Shown in pieces: positions 2,585 through 60,187 of a DNA stretch of 64,000 bases. A model generated the notes under the pieces. It did not search any database and was not told the DNA's origin. It saw only the letters and a program-made list of their open reading frames with translations. Made by a program: the position numbers and the translations under genes. The stretch spans positions 248,001-312,000 of the IMG/VR virus record IMGVR_UViG_3300031951_000003; one strand, given 5' to 3'. Every line of letters starts with the position of its first letter. The stretch's first letter is position 1.

Positions 2585-4720
2585 ATGTCAAATCCCGTTA
2601 TAATTATTGGTCAACAAAGAATTGTAAAAAAAACTGAGAAAATTTCTTTTTCCAATCCTACTGACTCTGTCATAACAATAAATTATCAGAAGAGTTCGAA
2701 TTTTCAGTGGGTTTACCAAGACGAAATACTACCTCAACAATCCAAAAGGATTTGGGCTGTTCCATCATCAATACAAATTCCAAATTACTTTTCTGAGAAT
2801 TTAGTTAGTCAAGATGACGGAGATATATTAAACATGATACAGACATATTCTTTGGGGGATGTTGTGAATGTCAACACCGAATCTTGTTATGTATATGAAT
2901 ACCCATATCCGTTTCCAGTCACTTTAAGAATTTCAAGTGAATATGCCTTACCACCCAACGTTAATATAGATTATAGAATTGCAACATACAATCCTCCTTA
3001 CATCGACCCAACAGTGTTCAACGGTATTCCTTGGACAAATTTAGTAACGAATTTTCAAGTTGGTGAGTGTCCCAATTATAACTTAGCAGGAACTGTTTAT
3101 ATCTCTTCTCCTTCTTTGGCTATCCAATATAGAGTGAGGGACTTATCTGACAATAGATTGAATTACTATTACATTATTTACCCTGAAACCTGTTTCGGAC
3201 CTGGAGAGGACCCTTGTAACATCAATTCAATACCTAGAATTTGGGACTTATTATTTTCTGGTTGTTCTATAGATGGTATTTCGATTTATTTATTTGAACC
3301 ATCCCAAATTCCCTTCGCTCAAGATGTTTGGATGGTATTGAAATCTCCTCCAGGAAACATAACCAACTGCACTACCCCAACTCCAACATCGACCGTTACA
3401 CAAACACCAACCAACACTCAAACACCAACAAATACTTCTACACAAACTCCAACGCCAACTAACACTCAAACACCTACCAACACCTCTACCCCGACTCCAA
3501 CGCCAACTAACACTCAAACACCTACCAACACTCAAACACCTACCAACACTCAAACACCTACACAGACCCCTCCTGTTTACTATTATTCAGCTCTTCTATG
3601 TGGGGACCCATCTTTCTTGAGATATTTCCGTTCGTCGAATCCAAATTTAACCGACAGTTGTTCTGTAATTTACGGTTATTGTGATGAGGCACCTCATACT
3701 GAATGTGGGGGAGTTCCTCAATGTTTTGATAATGTAAGCCCTTCGGTTGTCGTGAATTCGAATGATGTTTTAGAATGTTTCGATAGTTGTGAGTGTTGTC
3801 AGGGACTTTGTCCAACACCATCCCCAACTCCTACAATAAACCCGACCTCAACACCAACACCGACCACGACACCATCTCTAACCCCTACATTGACCTCAAC
3901 TCCTACATTAACTCCTACATCGACCTCGACCTCTACACCAACACCAACAACCAGTCCGACAGTCACAGGCACACTTACTCCTACACCAACACAAACGAGA
4001 CTTGCCGATTGTTATCAAAAAATTTATTTCGATGTAACATTAACTGAAACTTTTTTCAGTTACACAGATTGTTGTAGTGGAGAAGTAAATATCCTGAGCG
4101 TTGAAGCTGGTGTTGATTCTTGGGGTGCACCCGAGGGTTGTATAGAATATGGTTCAGTAACTGTTATTTCAGGTGAGTTCAATAATTTGTATTATAATTC
4201 ACCTTGTGCGTGTCCGACACCCACACCAACATTGACAGCCTCTAATACTCCAACTCCAACAACTACTAACACACCAACATTGACCGCTTCTAATACTCCA
4301 ACTCCAACAACTACTAGTACACCAACTAACTCACCAACAACTACCAACTCACCTACACCAACGCTTACACAGACTCCGACGGCCTCTGTAACTCAAACTC
4401 CTACACCAACACAAACAGAACCAACAGTTACACAGTCTGTAACACCATCTCAAACACCTACGCAATCATTTGTATTTTACCCTTATTCAGTTACCTCAGG
4501 ACAAACTTTTGTATCGATAGATTGTAATCCTGTTGTTTTAACTCAGACCTTATATGCCGCAGAATCAAGTTGGTATACAATTACCAAATTTTATTCAGAT
4601 TCAAACCTAACAACACCATACAATGGTAATGACTTGTATTATACCAACAACACTTTAGGTTCCTCCGATTGGTATAGAATCGCAACGAATGGTTCAATAA
4701 CTGATAGCTACGGTTGTTAA
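2585..4720 (+). CDS. Pro/Thr-rich (mucin-like), Cys-rich virion surface/fibre protein
   Basis: TPTPT/TQTPTN linkers separate Cys-rich modules; start moved to ATG 2585, 6 nt after TATTTAT. Confidence 0.75.
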   Translation: MSNPVIIIGQQRIVKKTEKISFSNPTDSVITINYQKSSNFQWVYQDEILPQQSKRIWAVPSSIQIPNYFSENLVSQDDGDILNMIQTYSLGDVVNVNTESCYVYEYPYPFPVTLRISSEYALPPNVNIDYRIATYNPPYIDPTVFNGIPWTNLVTNFQVGECPNYNLAGTVYISSPSLAIQYRVRDLSDNRLNYYYIIYPETCFGPGEDPCNINSIPRIWDLLFSGCSIDGISIYLFEPSQIPFAQDVWMVLKSPPGNITNCTTPTPTSTVTQTPTNTQTPTNTSTQTPTPTNTQTPTNTSTPTPTPTNTQTPTNTQTPTNTQTPTQTPPVYYYSALLCGDPSFLRYFRSSNPNLTDSCSVIYGYCDEAPHTECGGVPQCFDNVSPSVVVNSNDVLECFDSCECCQGLCPTPSPTPTINPTSTPTPTTTPSLTPTLTSTPTLTPTSTSTSTPTPTTSPTVTGTLTPTPTQTRLADCYQKIYFDVTLTETFFSYTDCCSGEVNILSVEAGVDSWGAPEGCIEYGSVTVISGEFNNLYYNSPCACPTPTPTLTASNTPTPTTTNTPTLTASNTPTPTTTSTPTNSPTTTNSPTPTLTQTPTASVTQTPTPTQTEPTVTQSVTPSQTPTQSFVFYPYSVTSGQTFVSIDCNPVVLTQTLYAAESSWYTITKFYSDSNLTTPYNGNDLYYTNNTLGSSDWYRIATNGSITDSYGC

Positions 4721-4758
4721 AAAAACAAAAAACCCCACCAGTAGAAACTGACGGGGTT
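4719..4758 (-). terminator. intrinsic terminator ending the ncRNA transcript
   Basis: AACCCCGTCAG-loop-CTGGTGGGGTT (11 bp; the two G-U pairs form only on the minus strand) followed by TTTTGTTTTTTT. Confidence 0.85.
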
Positions 4759-4768
4759 GGCAAAAAAC

Positions 4769-5589
4769 TCTGAGAATACAAGTTTTGGTGAGAATCTTTG
4801 GAAGGATTATGATTTCCCTTCGTTTCCACTTCCTTTTGAGAAGTAATCCTCAGTCACGGTCAATTAGATTAACCAATCCTTAAGTTGTGTACCACTCTCT
4901 CGTTACTCATCACTCTTCGAGGTTGCCACCCCAATTAATCCTTGCGGGATTAGAGAACTTTCAAGAAAATCCTGTCGGGCTTGGGACCCTTCAAGGCTAA
5001 GAACATCTCTTAACTATGTAGTGACCTGTCGCACACAACTGACGAGCACTTTTCCTTGTTTAATTTTGAGTTTGTTAAACCTTAATTAACAAAGTTGGTT
5101 TACGGATGATGAAAGTAGCGGCCCGTCTGAAGCCATGCCATCTTTTGGACGACACGATACTAAGCTACTCTCTGAAGTCTCCCGACCTCCATATTTTGAG
5201 TCAACTTCATAACTAACCTCTTGGTAGAGAGAAAGTTAAGGTTCCATCAGCACCACCTGTTATGAAACTTACCTTGTTCGGTGTTAAGCCAACTCTAATA
5301 TTGAATCACGCAATTACTATGGTGGATGCCATAGTTTCTTACATTAATCCTTCAGGTTATTCTTATTGGTGTTCCCACCTCAATCAAACGACCCGTATCG
5401 CTTGATTACCCAACCACGTTCCCTACAGTGTCACCCTCAGTACTAAAGGTCAGATAATATCCTGATTGCCTACTCGAGTTCCCTTTCGGAAACCGCAGAC
5501 CTCCCAAACCAGGGAGTTCCACTTTATACTATTTTCATAGTTTATTTAATGACCATAGGCGGCCAATATCTTGAACAGAATGTCTCAGA
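4769..5589 (-). ncRNA. large structured non-coding RNA, probably GOLLD-like
   Basis: No credible ORF; many hairpins closed by GNRA loops on the minus strand (GTTTCC-GAAA-GGGAAC, GGTG-GGAA-CACC, GAGGTC-GGGA-GACTTC, ACTAT-GAAA-ATAGT); two domains joined by an AU-rich linker; 7-bp terminal stem; own promoter and terminator; tRNA nearby. Confidence 0.7.
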
Positions 5590-5638
5590 ATAAACCCGAA
5601 GGTTTCATCATCAACTAACTGTGAAGATAATATCTTAA

Positions 5639-5650
5639 TTCAAAGAACTT
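5639..5650 (-). promoter_or_regulatory. boxA-like antitermination site
   Basis: AAGTTCTTTGAA between the promoter and the large RNA. Confidence 0.55.
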
Positions 5651-5728
5651 TCAAATTTAAAGGGAAGAAGAATCTTGACGACCATCCGAAGTTGGAACAC
5701 TTACAACTCCTCCCCTTCAATTGTTTCA

Positions 5729-5760
5729 CAAAGTTAAGACACGTTTTTGGAACTGTCAAA
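5729..5760 (-). promoter_or_regulatory. Bacteroidota sigma-A-type promoter P3
   Basis: TTTG-N20-TAACTTTG. Confidence 0.8.
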
Positions 5761-5842
5761 TCTTTTTGAAACTTTTTTTGACTTTTTCTGATTCGATTCT
5801 AATACCCCCCACTCTTAATGGGACAGGTTCAAATTCAGTCTT

Positions 5843-5869
5843 TGTCAAAGAACATACGACTCTCATCGT
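5843..5869 (-). promoter_or_regulatory. boxB-like hairpin plus boxA-like site
   Basis: ACGAT-GAGA-GTCGT hairpin followed by TGTTCTTTGACA. Confidence 0.55.
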
Positions 5870-5877
5870 GTGTTTTA

Positions 5878-5909
5878 CAAAGATAAGAAGGTTTTTTTAA
5901 ACTCTCAAA
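5878..5909 (-). promoter_or_regulatory. Bacteroidota sigma-A-type promoter P2
   Basis: TTTG-N20-TATCTTTG. Confidence 0.8.
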
Positions 5910-5920
5910 TCTTTTTTTTG

Positions 5921-5993
5921 TTGCGTCGCCTTGGAATCGAACCAAGCTAAGTGGGCTTATGAGACCCATGGAACACCTTGCCCCCCGCCCGCA
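5921..5993 (-). tRNA. tRNA with CAT anticodon (Met/fMet-like), aberrant acceptor stem, no encoded CCA
   Basis: T arm CTTGG-TTCGATT-CCAAG; anticodon arm TGGGT-CTCATAA-GCCCA; D stem GGGG/TTCC; acceptor TGCGGGC/GCGACGCA is imperfect. Confidence 0.75.
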
Positions 5994-5998
5994 ATATA

Positions 5999-6070
5999 AT
6001 GATTAACTCCTACTTACCCCTCGGTCACCTATCCACGTCATGCGCTGGTTGAACCAGCAGGAGTCATCAT
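5999..6070 (-). ncRNA. small structured RNA element of unknown type
   Basis: Closing stem ATGAT-GACTCCT...AGGAGTT-AATCAT encloses hairpin GCTGG-TTCAA-CCAGC; GC-rich; lies between a boxA-like site and the tRNA. Confidence 0.45.
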
Positions 6071-6114
6071 TTCAATATTTTTAAGAACTATGTTGTTTTG
6101 AAAAAGAAGTCCCA

Positions 6115-6146
6115 CAAATATACGGAGATTTTCTCAAATAACCAAA
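6115..6146 (-). promoter_or_regulatory. Bacteroidota sigma-A-type promoter P1
   Basis: TTTG-N20-TATATTTG; boxA-like AGTTCTTAAAAA at 6078-6089 downstream. Confidence 0.8.
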
Positions 6147-6276
6147 TTCGTGGGACTATTATTTCGAGATTACTCTTTTATTCATCTCGAGTGTTTGGGG
6201 TGTTCGTCCTCTCGGACATGAACATATAAATATTCCGAAAAGTTCAAAAAGTAACCCTAAGAAAAAATATTTTTTT

Positions 6277-6381
6277 TTAGTGGTCCAAATCGTCAACCAT
6301 TCTTCTGAGTTGTCTCATCATATCGAACCATCCTATGATTCCTATAACGATGACAAACATAATTAAACCTAATACAATCAT
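6277..6381 (-). CDS. small membrane protein (34 aa)
   Basis: MIVLGLIMFVIVIGIIGWFD...; ATGA overlap with the Nudix stop; not in the ORF track. Confidence 0.55.
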   Translation of the reverse strand: MIVLGLIMFVIVIGIIGWFDMMRQLRRMVDDLDH

Positions 6382-6797
6382 TGTAAAATAATTTCAGCTA
6401 ATTTATACATATAGTCACCTGTGTTTTCAGCACGGATTTCATCGAAACTGAAATACTTCCAATCAGTATGTTCTTCTCCGTCAATGGCTTTCTCGAAATC
6501 TGGTTCAATACATTCTTCAACAATTAACAAATACACATACATCAACCCTTTAACTTTTTTACCGTCACGAGTGTGTCTTGGAATGAGTCCAATAAAAGTA
6601 ATTTCTTGGTCATCGATACTAACCGCTGTTTCTTCGAAAAATTCGCGTTTGGCACCTTCTTGTGTTGTTTCATTTTCTTCGAGTTTTCCACCTGGAATCG
6701 ACCACATACCTGGGAAAGAACCGAGATTGTTTCTTTTACATAGTAAAACTTTATCCTTACATTTTACCATAATTCCTACATAGCTTTGTTGTTTCAT
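6378..6797 (-). CDS. Nudix hydrolase
   Basis: Nudix box GGKLEENETTQEGAKREFFEET. Confidence 0.9.
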   Translation of the reverse strand: MKQQSYVGIMVKCKDKVLLCKRNNLGSFPGMWSIPGGKLEENETTQEGAKREFFEETAVSIDDQEITFIGLIPRHTRDGKKVKGLMYVYLLIVEECIEPDFEKAIDGEEHTDWKYFSFDEIRAENTGDYMYKLAEIILQ

Positions 6798-6811
6798 TGT
6801 ATTTATTAAAT

Positions 6812-7159
6812 ATGATTGTTGAAATTAATGAAAATTATTTTAATGTTAAAACATTGGTTGACCCAAAATCCCAAGCTATTGGGATGATGAGAAGAAAATT
6901 CGATGATTCATTCAATGGTTTATTATTTTTAATGGGTGGTAAAAAACAATGTTTTTGGATGAAAAATTGTATCATCCCACTTGATATAATAATGATAAAA
7001 AATAATGTTATTGTCAATATACATCACGACTGTCCTCCTTGTTTAGAGGAACCTTGTCCGAGTTATTGTGGAAATGGAAATATCGTATTAGAACTCGAGG
7101 GTGGGACCTGTGAAATGTTAGGGATTGAAGCTGGAGATACGGTAGAATATATCTTCTAA
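6812..7159 (+). CDS. DUF192-family protein
   Basis: GMM..R...GLLF...FWMKNCIIPLDI...VLEL.GG...GDTV pattern; start revised to ATG 6812. Confidence 0.85.
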   Translation: MIVEINENYFNVKTLVDPKSQAIGMMRRKFDDSFNGLLFLMGGKKQCFWMKNCIIPLDIIMIKNNVIVNIHHDCPPCLEEPCPSYCGNGNIVLELEGGTCEMLGIEAGDTVEYIF

Positions 7160-9312
7160 ACTGTGAAATCTCTCACAAAAAATTTACTTGACCTCATTCT
7201 CAAAAATATTGTTTTTGGTTTCTCAGGCACTGTTCCAAAAAATGGTATTGTGGTTGAACCTATACTAATATCTGAAATACCACCTGCTTTAGCAACATCT
7301 ACTGCAAAGGTTGCACAATTCGAATCACCACCCTCTGTCAAATCTATGAATGAGTAACTTCTTGGTTTACTAGCCTCGTTCACAGAGTCTGTGAAATTAG
7401 GTAATCTCATAACATTTGTCCACATTGTTAGATTTGGACCGTCTTTGAAAGTTTTGGCTTTACAAGTTCTTGCAACATCACCAGCATTTGTGAAGTTTCC
7501 TTGTGAATCTATAGTCGCAATTTTCCCCATTTCAGTTTTCAAAACCTTTCCGTTTCCATCGTTATCGTAAGGTCCAAACTCATATAATTTTACAATACCT
7601 GTATGGTCAACTAAAATACAACCTCCATGTCCAGTGGCATATATTTTGATTTCTCTCTTTCCAACTTGTTCATTCAAACCTAAATAATCCTCTACCCACT
7701 CCAATGCTCTTCCGTGGAATGCTAATATGCGAGCAATCCAAGAATCTGTCATTGAAGGTCTATATTTCGGAAAAACAAAGAACATAAAAAAACCTGATTG
7801 ATTTTTGTCTATGGGTTGAAGTGACTTAAAAACAAAATCATCCTTCTGTCTTGCAATTGATAAACTTGGTACTCTAATGTCCCCCGAAGAGGGATTGTAC
7901 TGTTCCTCCAATTTTGACTCAGATTGAGAAATTTTTTCCTTTAACTTTCTGAAGAAATCTGAAGCCAACATTTTTGTAAATTTTACATATGGTGCATCTT
8001 CTCTTTCAGGGTCATATCTATATTGACCTTCGGGTGGTCTTTTGGACCTACCAAGATAGTTCAATCCACTTATATTCGTGATACACTTGTGACCTCCAGA
8101 GTTTGCGTTGATTAATTCCCAAGCACTTACATTAATATTATCTAAGATACTTTTTTCTTCATCTGTTAATGATGTAAATGGTTTTGACATCATTTCTTTA
8201 AGTCTATTCAAAGCCTCTTCTCCTCTTTCTTGTTCTGCAAATTTTTCACCATAAACCGCATTAAAATCCTCGAATGTAAACCCAACACTTTCAGGGTTAA
8301 CACCTGTTTCACTAATCCATTTTATCGTTGATAACGGGACTTTTCTTTCCTTGAGTTGAGCTTCATACTTTGCAATGACCTCTTTAGCAATCTCTCCGAG
8401 ATTAACACCTTTGAGCTTCCTTTCCTTTTTAAAAGGATTGCATGATACTTGAAGTAATCCCATCGGCCATGCCATGATGAGAAAGTCTGCTTCAGGGTTA
8501 TTTCTAAATGGGGTATACCTGTCATAAGAGCCAGGCTTAACCATACTACCTCCACCATATTGGTAAATGATATTATCTTCAACATGGGGAAATCCTTTCA
8601 TTTGTTTTGCATAATCTTGTGCGTGTTTTTGTAGTTCTTCTGGTTTTGGTGCATTTGTATCTTTCATCCATGTTTTGATGTTACTAAGTATATTCATCAA
8701 AGATGGTTCTGAATTCATTACAAGTCGCTCCAAAAATCCTTTCTTGTTTTTGAATGCTAAAATGAGTTTGTTTATAACGAAACCCAATAACATTTTGTTT
8801 CTTTGTAACGGCTTTTCTTTATCTAATCTAAAAAGATAATTGACTACCTCCTCGGGACTTATATCTTGTCTAGCGAAATCTGCGGAGTCAACAGTGTTAA
8901 TCAATAAAACGTCAGATGAGGGAAATAAATCTTTGGGTGAAATTATTTGTGAGATTGTTTCCACGTTTGAACGTGCTTGTCTAAATGATTTCGAAGCACC
9001 TTTTTCCGCACCTATTTGTTTGTCATGATGGTCCGTGTGGATAACGAACATTGGTTTACCATGAGCAAAGTCAACCAAAACAGGCATGGTATCACCCTTA
9101 GCGTCATTCTTCTTAACCGCAAATTCTTTTTCCCCATATTGTATTACGTGAACATCTACCACATCAATACCATTGTTCTCAAGGTATTTTTTCATCGCAA
9201 TAGCAGTAGTTACACCATCTAAATCTTGGTGGAAATATATTTCAGCCTTCGGGTATCTTTTTCTTAATGCGGAAATATCTCTTAAACCTGTCTCAGTTAT
9301 TAGGTTCTTCAT
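7156..9312 (-). CDS. DHH-family phosphoesterase fused to a C-terminal His...Asn-Cys (permuted papain-like) domain
   Basis: HQDLDG, LVDF, TDHH and GGH motifs; C-terminal GHGG...YEFGPY...SNCATF. Confidence 0.7.
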   Translation of the reverse strand: MKNLITETGLRDISALRKRYPKAEIYFHQDLDGVTTAIAMKKYLENNGIDVVDVHVIQYGEKEFAVKKNDAKGDTMPVLVDFAHGKPMFVIHTDHHDKQIGAEKGASKSFRQARSNVETISQIISPKDLFPSSDVLLINTVDSADFARQDISPEEVVNYLFRLDKEKPLQRNKMLLGFVINKLILAFKNKKGFLERLVMNSEPSLMNILSNIKTWMKDTNAPKPEELQKHAQDYAKQMKGFPHVEDNIIYQYGGGSMVKPGSYDRYTPFRNNPEADFLIMAWPMGLLQVSCNPFKKERKLKGVNLGEIAKEVIAKYEAQLKERKVPLSTIKWISETGVNPESVGFTFEDFNAVYGEKFAEQERGEEALNRLKEMMSKPFTSLTDEEKSILDNINVSAWELINANSGGHKCITNISGLNYLGRSKRPPEGQYRYDPEREDAPYVKFTKMLASDFFRKLKEKISQSESKLEEQYNPSSGDIRVPSLSIARQKDDFVFKSLQPIDKNQSGFFMFFVFPKYRPSMTDSWIARILAFHGRALEWVEDYLGLNEQVGKREIKIYATGHGGCILVDHTGIVKLYEFGPYDNDGNGKVLKTEMGKIATIDSQGNFTNAGDVARTCKAKTFKDGPNLTMWTNVMRLPNFTDSVNEASKPRSYSFIDLTEGGDSNCATFAVDVAKAGGISDISIGSTTIPFFGTVPEKPKTIFLRMRSSKFFVRDFTV

Positions 9313-34093: not shown

Positions 34094-34234
34094 ATGGCAT
34101 GTAGTAGTTGTAAATCAAATCGTCCAATAAATAGAGTTAAATGGGGCGTGTTAATTTTAGGAAGTTATATTGTTTTCTCATCTGTTTACGGAACAATCGA
34201 AATATTCAAAATTATAATAGAATTTTTTAAATAG
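34094..34234 (+). CDS. small MACSSCK membrane protein (46 aa)
   Basis: N-terminal CxxC plus one TM; not in the ORF track. Confidence 0.65.
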   Translation: MACSSCKSNRPINRVKWGVLILGSYIVFSSVYGTIEIFKIIIEFFK

Positions 34235-35147
34235 GTCTCTCGAATTTCAAATTGAGTTTAACATAAAAATCACCACCTTTATATCCTTTTCCTCTTAATC
34301 TTAAAGGTTTAGATGTGTCTATTATTTTTGGTGCTTGTAAATTTAAATCACCATCTGGATGTGGAATTAAAAATTTATCATTTTGTATTTGTTCCAAATT
34401 CAGTGTCAAATTATAAACCAAATCTGAATTAATCTTTTCAAACCCATCTTTCGGGACCATTTCCACTTGAATTACCAAATCCCCCATACCTCCGTTTTTG
34501 AAATCACCCAAGTTTGGTAGTTTGAGAAACTGTCCACTATCAATACCTTGTGGGACTTTGACCCTAATGCTATGAATGGTCTGACTTGTTCCTTTTCCAC
34601 CACACAAATAACACCTTTCAACTAAAATGGTTCCTTGACCATTGCAGTTCCCGCAAATTGTCCTTATTTGTTGAACCATGAATCCTGTCCCAAATGTTTT
34701 GATAAAGAAACCTTGACCACCGCAAGACCCACAGGTTTGATGCTGGCCCCCGTTACCTTGACAAGAATTACACGGAATATCTCTACTATATTGAATTTCC
34801 TTTTCCCCACCCAAATAGGATTCAATTGGTGAAACTTGAAGTCTCACAACTTTGTCTGGTGCATGCCTCGGTCTTTGTCCTTGGAAATGAGGATTGCGAC
34901 CAAACATGTTATCAAAGAAACTCTCAAAATTGGTTCCTTGATATGGGTTGGACTTTTGATTATTATACTGAGCTCTTTTTTCTCTGTCTCCCAAAACTTC
35001 GTAAGCTTCGTTTATCTCTTTAAATTTTTCAGCACCATCGGGATTGATGTCAGGATGAAATCTTTTTGAGAGGTTTCTGTAACTCTTTTTGATTTCATCT
35101 TCTGAGGCATTCTCTTCAACTTCTAGAATTTTGTAGTAATTTTTCAT
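34227..35147 (-). CDS. dnaJ: DnaJ chaperone
   Basis: J domain with HPD, four CxxCxGxG motifs, C-terminal domain. Confidence 0.95.
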   Translation of the reverse strand: MKNYYKILEVEENASEDEIKKSYRNLSKRFHPDINPDGAEKFKEINEAYEVLGDREKRAQYNNQKSNPYQGTNFESFFDNMFGRNPHFQGQRPRHAPDKVVRLQVSPIESYLGGEKEIQYSRDIPCNSCQGNGGQHQTCGSCGGQGFFIKTFGTGFMVQQIRTICGNCNGQGTILVERCYLCGGKGTSQTIHSIRVKVPQGIDSGQFLKLPNLGDFKNGGMGDLVIQVEMVPKDGFEKINSDLVYNLTLNLEQIQNDKFLIPHPDGDLNLQAPKIIDTSKPLRLRGKGYKGGDFYVKLNLKFERPI

Positions 35148-57337: not shown

Positions 57338-60187
57338 TTAATCCTGTGCACATTTACAGCTCGCGTTTGAACATTGTTTTGATGAACAAGAGATAAGAGA
57401 ATTATCTACGCTGTCAATACAATAAGCAACTATTGTTGGGTCAGGTCCTGGACTTCCTGAAACGTTGTCTATCATATTACCCGAAGAATTTCCACTTGTT
57501 ATTGTTACGGTTTTATAAAATACCCCATAGTTACTCGTCTCAATCTGAATCGAAAAACTAGTATCAATTGTCACAATGTTTTGCGTAGTAATTACTATGT
57601 CCACTGCGGGTTCACCCAAATTAGTAGTTGGTGTCACAATCAAACTTGTCACAGGATTACAAACAATACTTCCACCATCACTATTATAAACCATCTTGAA
57701 CACATCACCTGCAACAAGATTAATCGGGTTATACATAACAACACTAACACTTTCATTTATTCCCGCAGAACAGAATCCGTTGAAAATACCCGAGCCAACT
57801 TCAACGTCATTCAGCATTGCTTTAACCTCAACATAATAATTGTCGCTTGTTGGTGTTTGGAAGTTTGCCTGCATGTATTGAACATTATTATTTGGGGATA
57901 TACCACACGGATATGTGGATAGTCCTGAATCAATTGTAAGAACACCACCAGTAGGGCTATATCTGAAATTTTGGAAACAACCCACCTTATTTGGTCCTGA
58001 ACAAATTAATCCTCCAACTAATTGATTCATGTTGAGATAAATGTTACCACTTTGAATAACACCTTGACATGTTACACATTCAGGTGTATCAACCTGACCT
58101 TGATAGGTGATTGAGTTGTTATTCACCTGTGTTTTTTCTGTATCACCTACCGCTGAACAACAAGTGCATCCTTTGATGACTACATCAGAAACTTGAAAAG
58201 AAATTGTCTGTTGTAGATTAGTTGTGCAGTTGGACTGAGCTCCAACTTGACCATCGGTTATTGTTAATATCGAAGTAGTAGAACCTGAAACAGTGCTAAA
58301 ATTTGAGAGTTCCAACGAATATTGGTCAGTCTCAGTATCAATTCTTTGTGTCTCGGGATTACAGTTTGGTCTACTTCCAATAACAGTATCTATGTCTGTG
58401 GAGAAAGGTGTCTTTGTTGAACCATTTTGTAGAATAGTAAAGTTGTCTACACAAGTTCCTGTTCCTGGTCCATTGAATGTCTTGATAGATGATGTTGTCA
58501 AATTGAAATTAACCACAACTCCATTAGGTATAGGCGGAACCGAAGTAACATAAAAATATGTTGTTTTCGTTGAAATATTATTTGAAGATACCTCAGTGTT
58601 TAATTGTGGTTGTGTTATAATATTAATTTGATATGTTTGTGGACTTCCCACTGAACTTATTTGAACCGATTGATTAACTATATTATTCGCGGCATCTATA
58701 ACTCTAATATTGTATGTGTTCGGGCAAAGATTTGTAAAAATATTTGAGGTTTGATATGATACCCCGTTATTAATCGAATATTGATATGGTGCTAATCCAA
58801 ATCTCGCACTAACCGTTATTGAACCATCACAGTTCGTTTGGTTGTTGCAAGACGCATCTTGTTTTGTTGTTGTCACTTGAAGTGGTATTATTGTAGGACA
58901 AGAACCTAAAGTTACATTTATAGTATAAGTTTGTGTTCCACCAAGTAAACTCCAACCACCTAAAGGTGGTAATGAAGTGGTTGAGGACGCAAAAATACCT
59001 CCCCCCACAGGGTTTATTGGTGTTATCAAATCTGAACCAACAAGTTCCCATCTTGTTCCTTTCCACACAATGTTCTGTGAATTACTACTTGTCCATCTTG
59101 GTTTACCATTAGACGTTCCATTTTGACTGAACGTTGTTGGTCCTACAACGTTAGAATTGTTGTATGCCAAGAAACAAATGTTGGCGTAAACTGGTGGAGG
59201 TGTTGTGGATGGCGTTACAGTTGGGGATGGAGTTGGACTTGCTGTCGGTAAAAGTATGGAGCAAACTGTGTTTGCAGTATAGTCACCGTAATAATCAACA
59301 ACGGTAACAGGATAATAACCAGGTCCTATGTTAGTTAAAGTTCTTGTTCTTTGACCATTTGCCCAATAAATTGAATACGGACTTGTTCCTCCTGTGATGT
59401 TCAAAGTGAGAATCCCATCATATGATTCTGAGTTTGAAGGCATTTTGAGAAGATTACAATTCACACCCAAATCGAAAAGGGTAAACGGTTCACAATTGTT
59501 TTTCGGACGATAAACTGGTGTTGGGTTAGGTGTTGGTGTTTGACTTGGTGTTACATTTGGTGTCAGACTTGGCGTTTGAGTAGGGGTCGGTGTAGTTGTG
59601 AGAGTAGTTGTTGGTGAGGCTGTTTGTGTTGGTGTTGGGGTCAGGCACGCTGTGGTTGCAGGCTCGTTCAATAAAACTACACCACTATAAACTTGAGTAT
59701 AATCTAACGAAACAAGGACTTCAAAACTTTCACCTTTTTGGAAATTACCACAACAATCTGTATACCAAAATATTCCAGTTGTATAAGCACTTCCACACAC
59801 TATTGGGGTGGATGATGGGGTCTGCGTTGGTGTAGGGGTATTAGTGGGAGTTTTGGTAGGGGTCGGTGTTTGGGTTGGAGTTTTAGTTTGCGTAATAGTT
59901 TGTGTTGGTGTTGGTGGTGGGGTTTGAGATTGGGTTGGCGGGGGGGTTTGAGTCGGTGTTTGTGTAGGGGTTTGGCTCGAAGAAGGAATAGGGGGCGTGG
60001 GACAAGCACCGAGAACTGTGAGTATTATGAACTCACCTGGAGCTTGACCTGGCACAGTATAGGAACAAACAGTTATTGTGCCGCTCGGTGGAATTGTAGG
60101 AATAGGATTCAATTCACAGTCAAACCCTATAGGAGTTGCAGGTAAAATTGCGGACCCATTTGTTATTTGATAGTTAATACAAGCCAT
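57338..60187 (-). CDS. Pro/Thr-rich, Cys-rich tail/surface protein with two SprB-like repeats
   Basis: DGILTLNITGGTSPYSIYWANG...GPGYYPVTVVD and DGSITVSA..GLAPYQYSINNG...FTNLCPNTYNIRVID. Confidence 0.75.
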   Translation of the reverse strand: MACINYQITNGSAILPATPIGFDCELNPIPTIPPSGTITVCSYTVPGQAPGEFIILTVLGACPTPPIPSSSQTPTQTPTQTPPPTQSQTPPPTPTQTITQTKTPTQTPTPTKTPTNTPTPTQTPSSTPIVCGSAYTTGIFWYTDCCGNFQKGESFEVLVSLDYTQVYSGVVLLNEPATTACLTPTPTQTASPTTTLTTTPTPTQTPSLTPNVTPSQTPTPNPTPVYRPKNNCEPFTLFDLGVNCNLLKMPSNSESYDGILTLNITGGTSPYSIYWANGQRTRTLTNIGPGYYPVTVVDYYGDYTANTVCSILLPTASPTPSPTVTPSTTPPPVYANICFLAYNNSNVVGPTTFSQNGTSNGKPRWTSSNSQNIVWKGTRWELVGSDLITPINPVGGGIFASSTTSLPPLGGWSLLGGTQTYTINVTLGSCPTIIPLQVTTTKQDASCNNQTNCDGSITVSARFGLAPYQYSINNGVSYQTSNIFTNLCPNTYNIRVIDAANNIVNQSVQISSVGSPQTYQINIITQPQLNTEVSSNNISTKTTYFYVTSVPPIPNGVVVNFNLTTSSIKTFNGPGTGTCVDNFTILQNGSTKTPFSTDIDTVIGSRPNCNPETQRIDTETDQYSLELSNFSTVSGSTTSILTITDGQVGAQSNCTTNLQQTISFQVSDVVIKGCTCCSAVGDTEKTQVNNNSITYQGQVDTPECVTCQGVIQSGNIYLNMNQLVGGLICSGPNKVGCFQNFRYSPTGGVLTIDSGLSTYPCGISPNNNVQYMQANFQTPTSDNYYVEVKAMLNDVEVGSGIFNGFCSAGINESVSVVMYNPINLVAGDVFKMVYNSDGGSIVCNPVTSLIVTPTTNLGEPAVDIVITTQNIVTIDTSFSIQIETSNYGVFYKTVTITSGNSSGNMIDNVSGSPGPDPTIVAYCIDSVDNSLISCSSKQCSNASCKCAQD

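What the first reader, a model, noticed from the sequence alone, without database searches (positions are those of the whole stretch)
5630..6160. rRNA-operon-style expression platform: three tandem consensus host promoters, each followed by a boxA-like site
Seen: three TTTG-N20-TAnnTTTG promoters (6115-6146, 5878-5909, 5729-5760), all on the minus strand. Each is followed by a GTTCTT(T/A) box (AGTTCTTAAAAA, TGTTCTTTGACA, AAGTTCTTTGAA), two of them preceded by a hairpin. No ORF occurs before the terminator at 4719-4758. Established: boxB-boxA leaders recruit Nus factors to antiterminate and co-fold untranslated rRNA/tRNA transcripts. Inference: the phage transcribes its ncRNA cluster early and heavily as if it were an rrn operon, and may also titrate host NusB/NusE.
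Basis: partly seen in the sequence, partly recalled or inferred. Interest (0 to 1): 0.72.

Follow-up and report, generated by a model that had tools for sequence, protein, structure and literature searches.

The report
rRNA-style boxA leader driving phage GOLLD RNA
A 321-kb freshwater phage of Bacteroidota makes its giant non-coding GOLLD RNA from tandem host-type promoters, each followed by the short "boxA" signal that the host puts in front of its ribosomal RNA. This suggests the phage borrows the host's rRNA anti-termination machinery to make this long untranslated RNA.

Summary
Three perfect Bacteroidota promoters (TTTG-N20-TAnnTTTG) lie at 6115-6146, 5878-5909 and 5729-5760 on the minus strand. 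Each is followed by a GTTCTT box.

The "ncRNA cluster" they drive is now identified:
- a GOLLD RNA (Rfam 322 bits, 3' domain 4767-5172) ending at an intrinsic terminator;
- upstream of it, a degenerate tRNA-Met-like element;
- a conserved ~70-nt RNA element.

Boxes 2 and 3 (GTTCTTTGACA, GTTCTTTGAAT) are the boxA of Bacteroidota rrn operons. In an unbiased sample the motif lies in 66 of 84 16S leaders and 70 of 75 16S-23S spacers, and never antisense in the leaders. Box 1 is a variant one nucleotide shorter.

The same cassette (promoter, covarying hairpin, GTTCTTT[G/A]A) lies at the 5' edge of the GOLLD 5' domain in 59 of 65 non-redundant viral GOLLD loci. It also precedes the phage's tmRNA.

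Lake metatranscriptomes show an abundant GOLLD body, a roughly 1-4% leader that reads through P3, and silent neighbouring genes.

Nus-factor binding, anti-termination, early timing and Nus titration remain untested. This is a new member of a known kind, of moderate to high interest.

The parts
6108..6157 (-). 12-bp hairpin followed by a U-rich run. It encloses P1. It may terminate the upstream NUDIX transcript. In other clades it is a leader hairpin lying behind an upstream promoter.
   Evidence: Fold, z = -2.75. Homologous hairpins in 23 distinct contexts.
6115..6146 (-). P1, a perfect Bacteroidota -33/-7 promoter motif (TTTG-N20-TAtaTTTG)
   Evidence: Kept in the closest relatives L173, L325 and L338 as TAgaTTTG. 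No RNA support.
6072..6088 (-). Box 1, GTTCTTAAAAATATTGA, a degenerate boxA one U short. The AAAATATTGAAAT tail is identical to Flavobacteriaceae rrn leaders.
   Evidence: The syntenic site in relatives reads GCTCTTTAA or GTTCTTTAA.
6000..6069 (-). Conserved ~70-nt structured RNA element of unknown function
   Evidence: The 36-nt core is exact in 49 viral contigs. The outer stem covaries. No Rfam match.
5921..5994 (-). Degenerate tRNA-Met-like element. The CAU anticodon arm and T-arm are intact. The D-arm and acceptor stem are aberrant.
   Evidence: ARAGORN and Rfam tRNA are negative. Relatives have a canonical tRNA-Met here.
5878..5909 (-). P2, a perfect promoter motif with an upstream A-tract, in rrn style
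5856..5869 (-). Small leader hairpin (ACGA-TGAGAG-TCGT), boxB-like in position
   Evidence: The family hairpin covaries at 6 of 6 pairs, with 0 of 500 shuffles reaching the observed score.
5843..5853 (-). Box 2, GTTCTTTGACA, an exact match to the Bacteroidota 16S-23S spacer boxA
5765..5840 (-). Structured spacer of unit 2 (AACCTGTCCCATTAAGAGTGGGGGGT...), conserved in L184 and L173
   Evidence: Fold, z = -2.78. Alignment.
5729..5760 (-). P3, a perfect promoter motif flanked by two phased A-tracts, very like rrn promoters
   Evidence: RNA contigs cross it.
5657..5720 (-). Long leader hairpin (purine arm GAAGGGGAGGAG, pyrimidine arm CTTCTTCCCTT)
   Evidence: The arms change in a compensating way in L184, L173, L154, L134 and L238.
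5638..5648 (-). Box 3, GTTCTTTGAAT, a leader-type boxA at the 5' edge of GOLLD
5173..5637 (-). GOLLD 5' domain (variable half)
   Evidence: Its position and length match the 420-nt 5' region of env-38 GOLLD. High RNA depth from about 5567 downward.
4767..5172 (-). GOLLD 3' domain
   Evidence: Rfam RF02032, 322.1 bits against a gathering score of 150, E = 1.9e-91.
4721..4758 (-). Intrinsic terminator (12-bp stem with 6 GC pairs, then a T-run)

Best explanation
Window 4721-6157 (minus strand) is one untranslated, rrn-operon-like transcription unit of a Bacteroidota jumbo phage.

Layout:
- Host sigma-A RNA polymerase starts at up to three tandem consensus promoters (P1, P2, P3).
- Each nascent leader carries a boxA (GUUCUUUGA[A/C]A). 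For P2 and P3 the box lies just after a hairpin.
- The unit holds a conserved ~70-nt RNA, a degenerate tRNA-Met, a short structured spacer and the roughly 870-nt GOLLD RNA.
- It ends at an intrinsic terminator.

Proposed mechanism (inferred): boxA recruits host NusB-S10. Together with NusA and NusG these convert the polymerase into a Rho-resistant, pause-resistant complex of the rRNA type. That complex can finish, and perhaps help fold, a long untranslated RNA that Rho would otherwise cut short. The leader is then trimmed away and the GOLLD body accumulates.

Shown: the motifs, their identity with the host-phylum rrn boxA, their family-wide conservation and strand bias, hairpin covariation, RNA read-through across P3, and the difference in abundance between leader and body.

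Inferred: Nus binding, anti-Rho action and leader processing.
For: 1. GOLLD identity: RF02032 at 322 bits, with the terminator directly after it.
2. Promoters: three perfect matches, P about 1e-7. P2 and P3 share the A-tract architecture and tandem arrangement of Bacteroidota rrn promoters.
3. Host boxA, found without bias. Eighty-four 16S leaders were fetched with a 16S-internal probe. GTTCTTTGA and GTTCATTGA are among the top 9-mers there. The motif G[ATC]TC[TAC]TT[GA]A occurs 86 times sense and 0 antisense, in 66 of 84 leaders, mostly 85-210 nt before the 16S gene. GTTC[A/T]TTGACATATTG lies in 70 of 75 16S-23S spacers, with none in sense orientation in 98 kb of 16S body. In two whole genomes every rrn operon is flanked by it.
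4. Family conservation. Of 66 non-redundant viral GOLLD loci, 62 carry the box in sense orientation (92 sense against 4 antisense copies). Of the 65 of these examined for box position, 59 carry it 409-545 nt before the 3' domain. GTTCTTTGA is the commonest 9-mer in that zone. Promoter motifs run 101 sense against 5 antisense.
5. A hairpin directly before the box covaries: 6 of 6 pairs change on both sides, 88% of cells are paired, and 0 of 500 shuffles reach this. This is the same layout as the B. subtilis rrn 5' hairpin plus boxA (AUGAUCUUUGAAA), which binds NusB (PMC13753749). The gamma-proteobacterial consensus is GYTCTTTAANA (PMC5725501).
6. The box is not specific to GOLLD. The phage tmRNA has a consensus promoter followed by a 16-nt leader, GTTCTTTGAAAATATT. 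Seven of 34 host ssrA genes do the same.
7. RNA evidence from four lake metatranscriptomes from four studies. Depth is in the hundreds to thousands over 4823-5567 and zero on flanking genes. Exact-match contigs at 5679-5853 and 5638-5824 cross P3 at 2-4x depth.
8. The phage encodes no NusB, S10 or NusG of its own. Bacteroidota do encode them.
Against: - No direct evidence exists for NusB-S10 binding or for Rho-dependent termination in this RNA. The complex prediction was not folded.
- Box 1 lacks one U of the U-tract and may be non-functional. P1 lies inside a hairpin, and unit 1 has no RNA coverage.
- GOLLD loci of cultured phages from other phyla (Caulobacter, Vibrio, Roseobacter, Mycobacterium) have no such box within 1.6 kb upstream. 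A boxA leader is therefore not needed for GOLLD in general.
- The contigs are unstranded assemblies, so start sites are not mapped. The 5' end of the abundant RNA species is only bracketed to 5567-5638.
- The box is invariant, so it gives no covariation signal to show whether it is paired in the mature RNA.
Confidence: 0.65

Rival explanations
1. The GTTCTTTGA box is an RNA-processing or structural determinant of stable-RNA precursors. It could be a nuclease recognition site, a boundary element, or part of the GOLLD fold. It would then not be a Nus-factor loading site.
For: The box lies at a fixed place at the 5' edge of the GOLLD 5' domain. It lies 10-16 nt before the mature 5' end of phage and host tmRNA. 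RNA depth drops 25- to 100-fold at about this point.
Against: The motif equals the boxA of rrn leaders and spacers, and is one nucleotide away from the B. subtilis boxA that binds NusB. Extra copies follow distal promoters at variable distances. No leader-trailer pairing signal was found (mean z = 0.03). In the predicted folds the box is largely unpaired.
Confidence: 0.15
2. The box acts at the DNA level as a promoter-proximal control element of stable-RNA promoters in Bacteroidota. It could be a growth-rate or stringent-control discriminator, or a factor-binding site.
For: In tmRNA genes and many GOLLD loci the box begins 5-27 nt after the -7 element. Strand bias fits this reading too.
Against: The same motif lies in the 16S-23S spacer, far from any promoter. 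It also lies 80-640 nt from the nearest promoter in several GOLLD loci and directly after a tRNA in L241.
Confidence: 0.08
3. The leaders mainly act as decoys that soak up host NusB-S10 and so shut down host rRNA synthesis.
For: There are up to three boxes per locus behind strong promoters, plus a fourth on the tmRNA. The phage has no Nus genes of its own.
Against: The leader RNA is only about 1-4% as abundant as the GOLLD body in four metatranscriptomes. One box per transcript is the commonest state in the family. Nothing in the data tests titration.
Confidence: 0.05
4. The promoters and boxes are chance matches in AT-rich intergenic DNA.
For: The genome has 35% GC. GTTCTTA alone is common, with 63 copies.
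Against: P is about 1e-7 for the promoter cluster and about 2e-5 for the box pair. The cassette is conserved across dozens of distinct phages, with 92:4 and 101:5 strand bias.
Confidence: 0.01

Closest known systems
rrn operon leader and spacer boxA (NusB-S10/NusA/NusG rRNA anti-termination complex) of E. coli, B. subtilis and, as shown here, Bacteroidota
   Same: The core motif (GUUCUUUGA against E. coli GCUCUUUAA and B. subtilis GAUCUUUGA). The order hairpin then boxA. Tandem strong promoters. A long untranslated structured product that includes a tRNA. A low-abundance leader.
   Different: The product is a phage GOLLD RNA, not rRNA. Each of the tandem promoters has its own box. No leader-trailer helix was detected. 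Function is untested.
Non-rRNA boxA targets (suhB 5' UTR, CRISPR arrays, toxin-antitoxin genes; Baniulyte et al. 2017, PMC5725501)
   Same: A boxA placed in front of a non-ribosomal transcript. In CRISPR arrays it protects a long untranslated RNA from Rho.
   Different: Those cases are chromosomal and proteobacterial. This one is phage-borne, in Bacteroidota, and heads a giant structured RNA.
Phage lambda nut sites (boxA-boxB plus N protein)
   Same: A phage uses the host Nus factors through a boxA in its own transcripts.
   Different: In lambda the order is boxA then boxB, and a phage N protein is required. Here the hairpin comes first, as in rrn operons. No phage Nus or N-like factor was found among those searched. 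The target is an ncRNA, not delayed-early genes.
GOLLD RNA (Rfam RF02032; env-38 14-mer nanocage, Kretsch et al., bioRxiv 10.1101/2024.12.08.627333)
   Same: The 3' domain scores 322 bits. The 5' domain is about 420-470 nt. A Met-tRNA lies upstream. The context is a phage with tRNAs nearby.
   Different: None of the GOLLD papers that could be searched mentions a promoter or boxA leader. GOLLDs of cultured phages from other phyla lack the box.

Membership tests
rrn-type boxA anti-termination leader | The RNA motif matches the boxA consensus (E. coli UGCUCUUUAACA; gamma-proteobacteria GYTCTTTAANA; B. subtilis AUGAUCUUUGAAA) | tested here: met
   Box 2 is GTTCTTTGACA and box 3 is GTTCTTTGAAT. Box 1, GTTCTTAAAAA, is one U short and is not counted.
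rrn-type boxA anti-termination leader | The same motif occurs in the host group's own rrn leader and 16S-23S spacer | tested here: met
   Present in 66 of 84 leaders and 70 of 75 spacers. Antisense copies: 0 in leaders and 5 in spacers. All rrn operons of two whole genomes carry it. The exact host species is unknown.
rrn-type boxA anti-termination leader | The motif lies in the transcribed leader, in sense orientation, downstream of the promoter | tested here: met
   By geometry, the boxes start 25-81 nt after the -7 elements. RNA contigs at 5638-5853 include box 3 and reach box 2. Start sites themselves are not mapped.
rrn-type boxA anti-termination leader | The motif binds the NusB-S10 heterodimer | not testable with these tools
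   The complex prediction job with Marinifilum NusB and S10 and the box 2 RNA was not folded.
rrn-type boxA anti-termination leader | The motif confers read-through of Rho-dependent terminators | not testable with these tools
   This needs reporter assays or in vitro transcription.
GOLLD RNA (RF02032) | The sequence scores above the Rfam gathering threshold across the full 3'-domain model | tested here: met
   322.1 bits against a threshold of 150, covering model positions 1-416.
Bacteroidota sigma-A promoter | -33 TTTG and -7 TAnnTTTG elements, 19-21 nt apart | tested here: met
   Three exact matches. The motif is enriched, and all 7 window matches lie on the minus strand, the strand of most long ORFs in the window.
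Bacteroidota sigma-A promoter | An experimentally mapped transcription start 5-9 nt after the -7 element | tested here: inconclusive
   An unstranded contig begins at 5853, about 18-23 nt after the expected P2 start. There is nothing over P1.
Lambda-type nut site | The order boxA then boxB, with a phage N-type protein | tested here: not met
   The hairpin precedes the box. No N homologue was looked for. NusB, S10 and NusG are absent from the phage.
tRNA (unit 1 element, 5921-5994) | A cloverleaf recognised by ARAGORN or the Rfam tRNA model | tested here: not met
   No call from either tool. Only the anticodon arm and T-arm are canonical. The element is syntenic with a true tRNA-Met in relatives.

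The most novel reading that the evidence does not exclude
Giant phage RNAs such as GOLLD are built as pseudo-rRNAs. Their synthesis, co-transcriptional folding and assembly into a 14-mer cage would depend on the host rRNA anti-termination and chaperone complex loaded at boxA. The multiple phage boxA leaders (GOLLD, tmRNA, tRNA-like units) would at the same time drain NusB-S10 from host rrn operons, so that phage ncRNA production and shutdown of host ribosome synthesis are coupled.
Probability: 0.12. Interest if true: 0.8.

Novelty: new member of a known kind. Interest (0 to 1): 0.6.

Why it matters
GOLLD is one of the largest and most elaborate bacterial or phage non-coding RNAs. It is now known to form a 14-mer nanocage, yet nothing is known about how it is made or what it does.

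This work gives the field several concrete handles:
- A large freshwater clade of GOLLD genes carries a conserved cassette of promoter, hairpin and boxA that is the same as the host's rrn and ssrA leaders.
- That makes a testable hypothesis about biogenesis: Nus-dependent, Rho-resistant, possibly chaperoned transcription.
- It gives a defined 5' boundary for the RNA.
- It assigns much of the "lake-derived" GOLLD to phages of Bacteroidota.
- It provides a ready expression cassette for Bacteroidota.

It also extends boxA control to phage ncRNAs, and in Bacteroidota to tmRNA genes.

Tried and rejected
- blastn of 4700-6300 against GenBank phages: only a 61-nt tRNA-like hit in an Aeromonas phage.
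- ARAGORN on the window: no tRNA.
- Rfam at E <= 1 on 4400-6500: nothing credible besides GOLLD.
- The search for related loci with the neighbouring 720-aa protein: only near-identical phages, so no use for covariation.
- Complex prediction with Swiss-Prot references NUSB/RS10_BACTN and _FLAJ1: references not held. With Marinifilum NusB and S10 plus box 2 RNA the job was counted but not folded, so it is not evidence either way.
- Search for an rrn-like leader-trailer helix between the box region and the 3' tail: mean z = 0.03. The method was crude.
- RNAalifold on 26 leaders with the start of the 5' domain: the alignment was too poor and no structure was returned.
- Test of whether a boxA leader is general to GOLLD: five cultured phages from other phyla have none, so the claim is limited to the Bacteroidota-type clade.
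- Search for phage-encoded NusB, S10 or NusG: none.
- Weinberg et al. 2009 (the original GOLLD paper) is not held in the library.
- The box at genome position 137460 (tRNA array) lies inside a promoter spacer, upstream of that promoter's start. It is not counted as support.

Full report
**Setting.** The window is bases 248001-312000 of a 321,139-bp virus record with direct terminal repeats and 35% GC. The phage carries 24 tRNA genes and a tmRNA. One of its proteins has an SprB repeat domain. Bacteroidota-type promoter motifs are enriched. Together these point to a jumbo phage of a Bacteroidota host.

**Observation check.** Reading 4500-6500 on the minus strand confirms three perfect TTTG-N20-TAnnTTTG matches:
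- 6115-6146
- 5878-5909
- 5729-5760

The window has 7 such matches, all on the minus strand, against 2.36 expected (0 of 100 shuffles reach 7). Three within 418 nt of one strand has P about 8e-8.

Exact GTTCTTTGA is rare, with 17 copies in both strands of the genome. Two copies within 230 nt has P about 2e-5.

Hairpins precede box 2 and box 3. Only trivial ORFs lie between 6160 and the terminator at 4731-4758.

**What the promoters drive.** Rfam finds a GOLLD RNA 3' domain at 4767-5172 on the minus strand, at 322 bits against a gathering score of 150. The terminator follows directly.
- GOLLD has a conserved 3' half and a variable 5' half of about 420 nt. The env-38 member, which also lies downstream of a Met-tRNA, forms a 14-mer nanocage (bioRxiv 10.1101/2024.12.08.627333; PMC12990946).
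- Here the 5' half occupies about 5173-5637, so box 3 lies at its 5' edge.
- Unit 1 (P1 to P2) holds a ~70-nt structured element (6000-6069) and a tRNA-like element with a CAU anticodon arm and a canonical T-arm. Its D-arm is aberrant, and neither ARAGORN nor Rfam calls it a tRNA.
- Relatives carry a canonical tRNA-Met at that position.

**Is the box the host's boxA?** I fetched Bacteroidota rrn operons with a probe internal to the 16S gene, so the leaders were not selected for any motif.
- A k-mer census of 84 leaders ranks GTTCTTTGA, and in Flavobacteriaceae GTTCATTGA, among the commonest 9-mers besides promoter words.
- G[ATC]TC[TAC]TT[GA]A occurs 86 times in sense and never in antisense. 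It is present in 66 of 84 leaders, mostly 85-210 nt before the 16S gene. It often follows a promoter, a hairpin and an A-rich stretch.
- The 16S-23S spacer carries GTTC[A/T]TTGACATATTG in 70 of 75 operons. The 16S body has no sense copy. Presence in both leader and spacer is the hallmark of boxA.
- In two whole genomes, each 16S gene has the motif in its spacer. In G003 it also lies in the leader.
- Box 2 (GTTCTTTGACA) is the spacer form. Box 3 (GTTCTTTGAAT...ATATT) is the leader form.
- Box 1 (GTTCTTAAAAATATTGAAATGA) shares a 13-nt tail with Flavobacteriaceae leaders but lacks one U. The syntenic site in relatives reads GCTCTTTAA or GTTCTTTAA.
- Published consensus sequences are close: GYTCTTTAANA in gamma-proteobacteria (PMC5725501) and AUGAUCUUUGAAA after a 5' hairpin in B. 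subtilis, where NusB binding was shown (PMC13753749).

**Family-wide conservation.** A scan of viral contigs with a pattern from the GOLLD 3' core returned 119 loci. nhmmer confirmed GOLLD in 106 of them.
- Among 66 non-redundant loci with at least 800 nt of upstream sequence, the box occurs 92 times in sense and 4 in antisense, and 62 loci have it.
- Among the 65 of these loci examined for box position, 59 carry the box 409-545 nt before the 3' domain. GTTCTTTGA is the commonest 9-mer in that zone.
- Bacteroidota promoter motifs are 101 sense against 5 antisense.
- The usual cassette is: A-tract, TTTG, spacer, TAnnTTTG, TAAAACAAA, a 5-6-bp hairpin, 2-4 nt, GTTCTTTGAAA, an AT-rich stretch, then the GOLLD 5' domain. 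Unit 2 of the window has exactly this layout.
- The hairpin covaries. All 6 pairs change on both sides, 88% of cells pair, and 0 of 500 shuffles reach the observed score. Registers slid by one to three columns fall to 18-46% paired.
- Tandem promoter-plus-box modules recur in relatives and in host rrn operons.

**The box is not specific to GOLLD.**
- The phage tmRNA gene has a consensus promoter followed by a 16-nt leader, GTTCTTTGAAAATATT.
- Seven of 34 sampled Bacteroidota ssrA genes have the box 10-16 nt before the mature 5' end.
- This argues for a general stable-RNA transcription signal and against a structural piece of GOLLD.
- It is not universal to GOLLD either. Five cultured phages of Caulobacter, Vibrio, Roseobacter and Mycobacterium have no such box within 1.6 kb upstream.

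**RNA evidence.** Twenty freshwater metatranscriptome runs hold part of this stretch. Contigs of four runs from four studies were laid on 3500-7500.
- Depth is in the hundreds to thousands over 4823-5567.
- Depth is zero on both flanking genes, apart from about 2x in one run.
- Two exact-match contigs at low depth (5679-5853 at 4.4x; 5638-5824 at 2.4x) cross P3. Transcription starting at or above P2 therefore reads through P3.
- The leader is about 1-4% as abundant as the body, as expected for a processed leader.
- Nothing covers unit 1.
- The contigs are unstranded, and they break where relatives diverge. Start sites and the exact mature 5' end (somewhere in 5567-5638) are therefore not resolved.

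**Mechanism.** The best reading is an rrn-style expression platform. Host RNA polymerase starts at strong tandem promoters. BoxA on the nascent leader loads host NusB-S10, and the modified polymerase resists Rho and pausing along 1.0-1.4 kb of untranslated, highly structured RNA. The leader is then removed.
- The phage encodes no NusB, S10 or NusG. Bacteroidota genomes do.
- Binding and anti-termination are inferences. The one computational attempt was not folded.

**Caveats.**
- P1 lies inside a 12-bp hairpin with a U-rich tail. That hairpin may terminate the upstream NUDIX transcript.
- In other clades the same hairpin has no promoter motif, and a promoter lies about 12 nt upstream of it.
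- Box 1 is degenerate.
- The Nus-titration idea is not supported by the low abundance of the leader.

**Novelty.** No paper in the searchable library links GOLLD with boxA or anti-termination. The original 2009 GOLLD paper was not available. I file this as a new member of the known class of boxA leaders, in a new and interesting context.

Noticed in passing
window 6000-6069 (-): A ~70-nt structured RNA element lies between box 1 and the tRNA-Met-like element. Its 36-nt core (GCTGGTNCAACCAGCGCATGACGTGGATAGGTGACCG) is exact in 49 IMG/VR contigs. In nearly all of the 23 distinct contexts a tRNA-Met follows it. The outer stem covaries. It has no Rfam match and its function is unknown.
   Followed up: partly
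window 5921-5994 (-): A degenerate tRNA-Met-like element. The CAU anticodon arm and the GGTTCGATTCC T-arm are intact, but the D-arm and acceptor stem are aberrant. ARAGORN and Rfam miss it. Relatives have a canonical tRNA-Met at the same place. A tRNA-Met is linked in sense orientation to GOLLD in 25 of 66 loci.
   Followed up: partly
genome 125391-125835 (+), L249: The phage tmRNA (tag AEEATVVA*) has a consensus promoter and a 16-nt leader that is simply boxA plus ATATT. Seven of 34 sampled Bacteroidota ssrA genes share this layout. BoxA therefore appears to be a general stable-RNA leader signal in this phylum.
   Followed up: partly
genome about 181,500-182,400 (-), L248: A second ncRNA locus with tandem promoters. 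In order it holds: a conserved hairpin (TTTGAAAC..GGCGATGAAAGACACTCGG..TTCAAA), GTTCTTACAAA, a tRNA-like element with a GAA anticodon and an 18-nt insert in the D-loop (Rfam tRNA only 24.6 bits), another promoter, about 300 nt of unknown RNA, and a terminator. The same hairpin precedes the box in GOLLD loci L197, L135, L234, L145 and L170.
   Followed up: partly
window 4823-5567: GOLLD RNA of this phage and its relatives is very abundant in freshwater metatranscriptomes, at summed contig depth of hundreds to thousands, while neighbouring phage genes are at zero.
   Followed up: partly
supplement of bioRxiv 10.1101/2024.12.08.627333 (ROOL alignment): Several gut-metagenome ROOL rows begin UGUUCUUUGAUAUGAAAAUG. 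A boxA-like word therefore also lies at the 5' edge of another giant phage RNA. This could be coincidence, because part of it is drawn as paired.
   Followed up: no
rrn loci L002-L121: The form of the spacer boxA tracks taxonomy. GTTCTTTGACA occurs in Sphingobacteriales and Marinilabiliales, GTTCATTGACA in Flavobacteriaceae, GATCATTGACA in Weeksellaceae, and GATCTTTGACA in Bacteroidaceae. The window's box 2 is the first form, a weak hint about the host.
   Followed up: no
genome 137441-137472 (-): A GTTCTTTGAAA lies inside the spacer of a promoter that heads a tRNA array (tRNA-Glu and onward), just after a terminator-like hairpin. It lies upstream of that promoter's start, so its role is unclear.
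   Followed up: no
window 7156-9312 (-), 34227-35147 (-), 57338-60187 (-): Protein-coding neighbours include a 718-aa protein with DHH and TseH-like domains, a full DnaJ homologue, and a 949-aa protein with an SprB repeat. A NUDIX hydrolase (6378-6797) lies directly upstream of the ncRNA unit.
   Followed up: no
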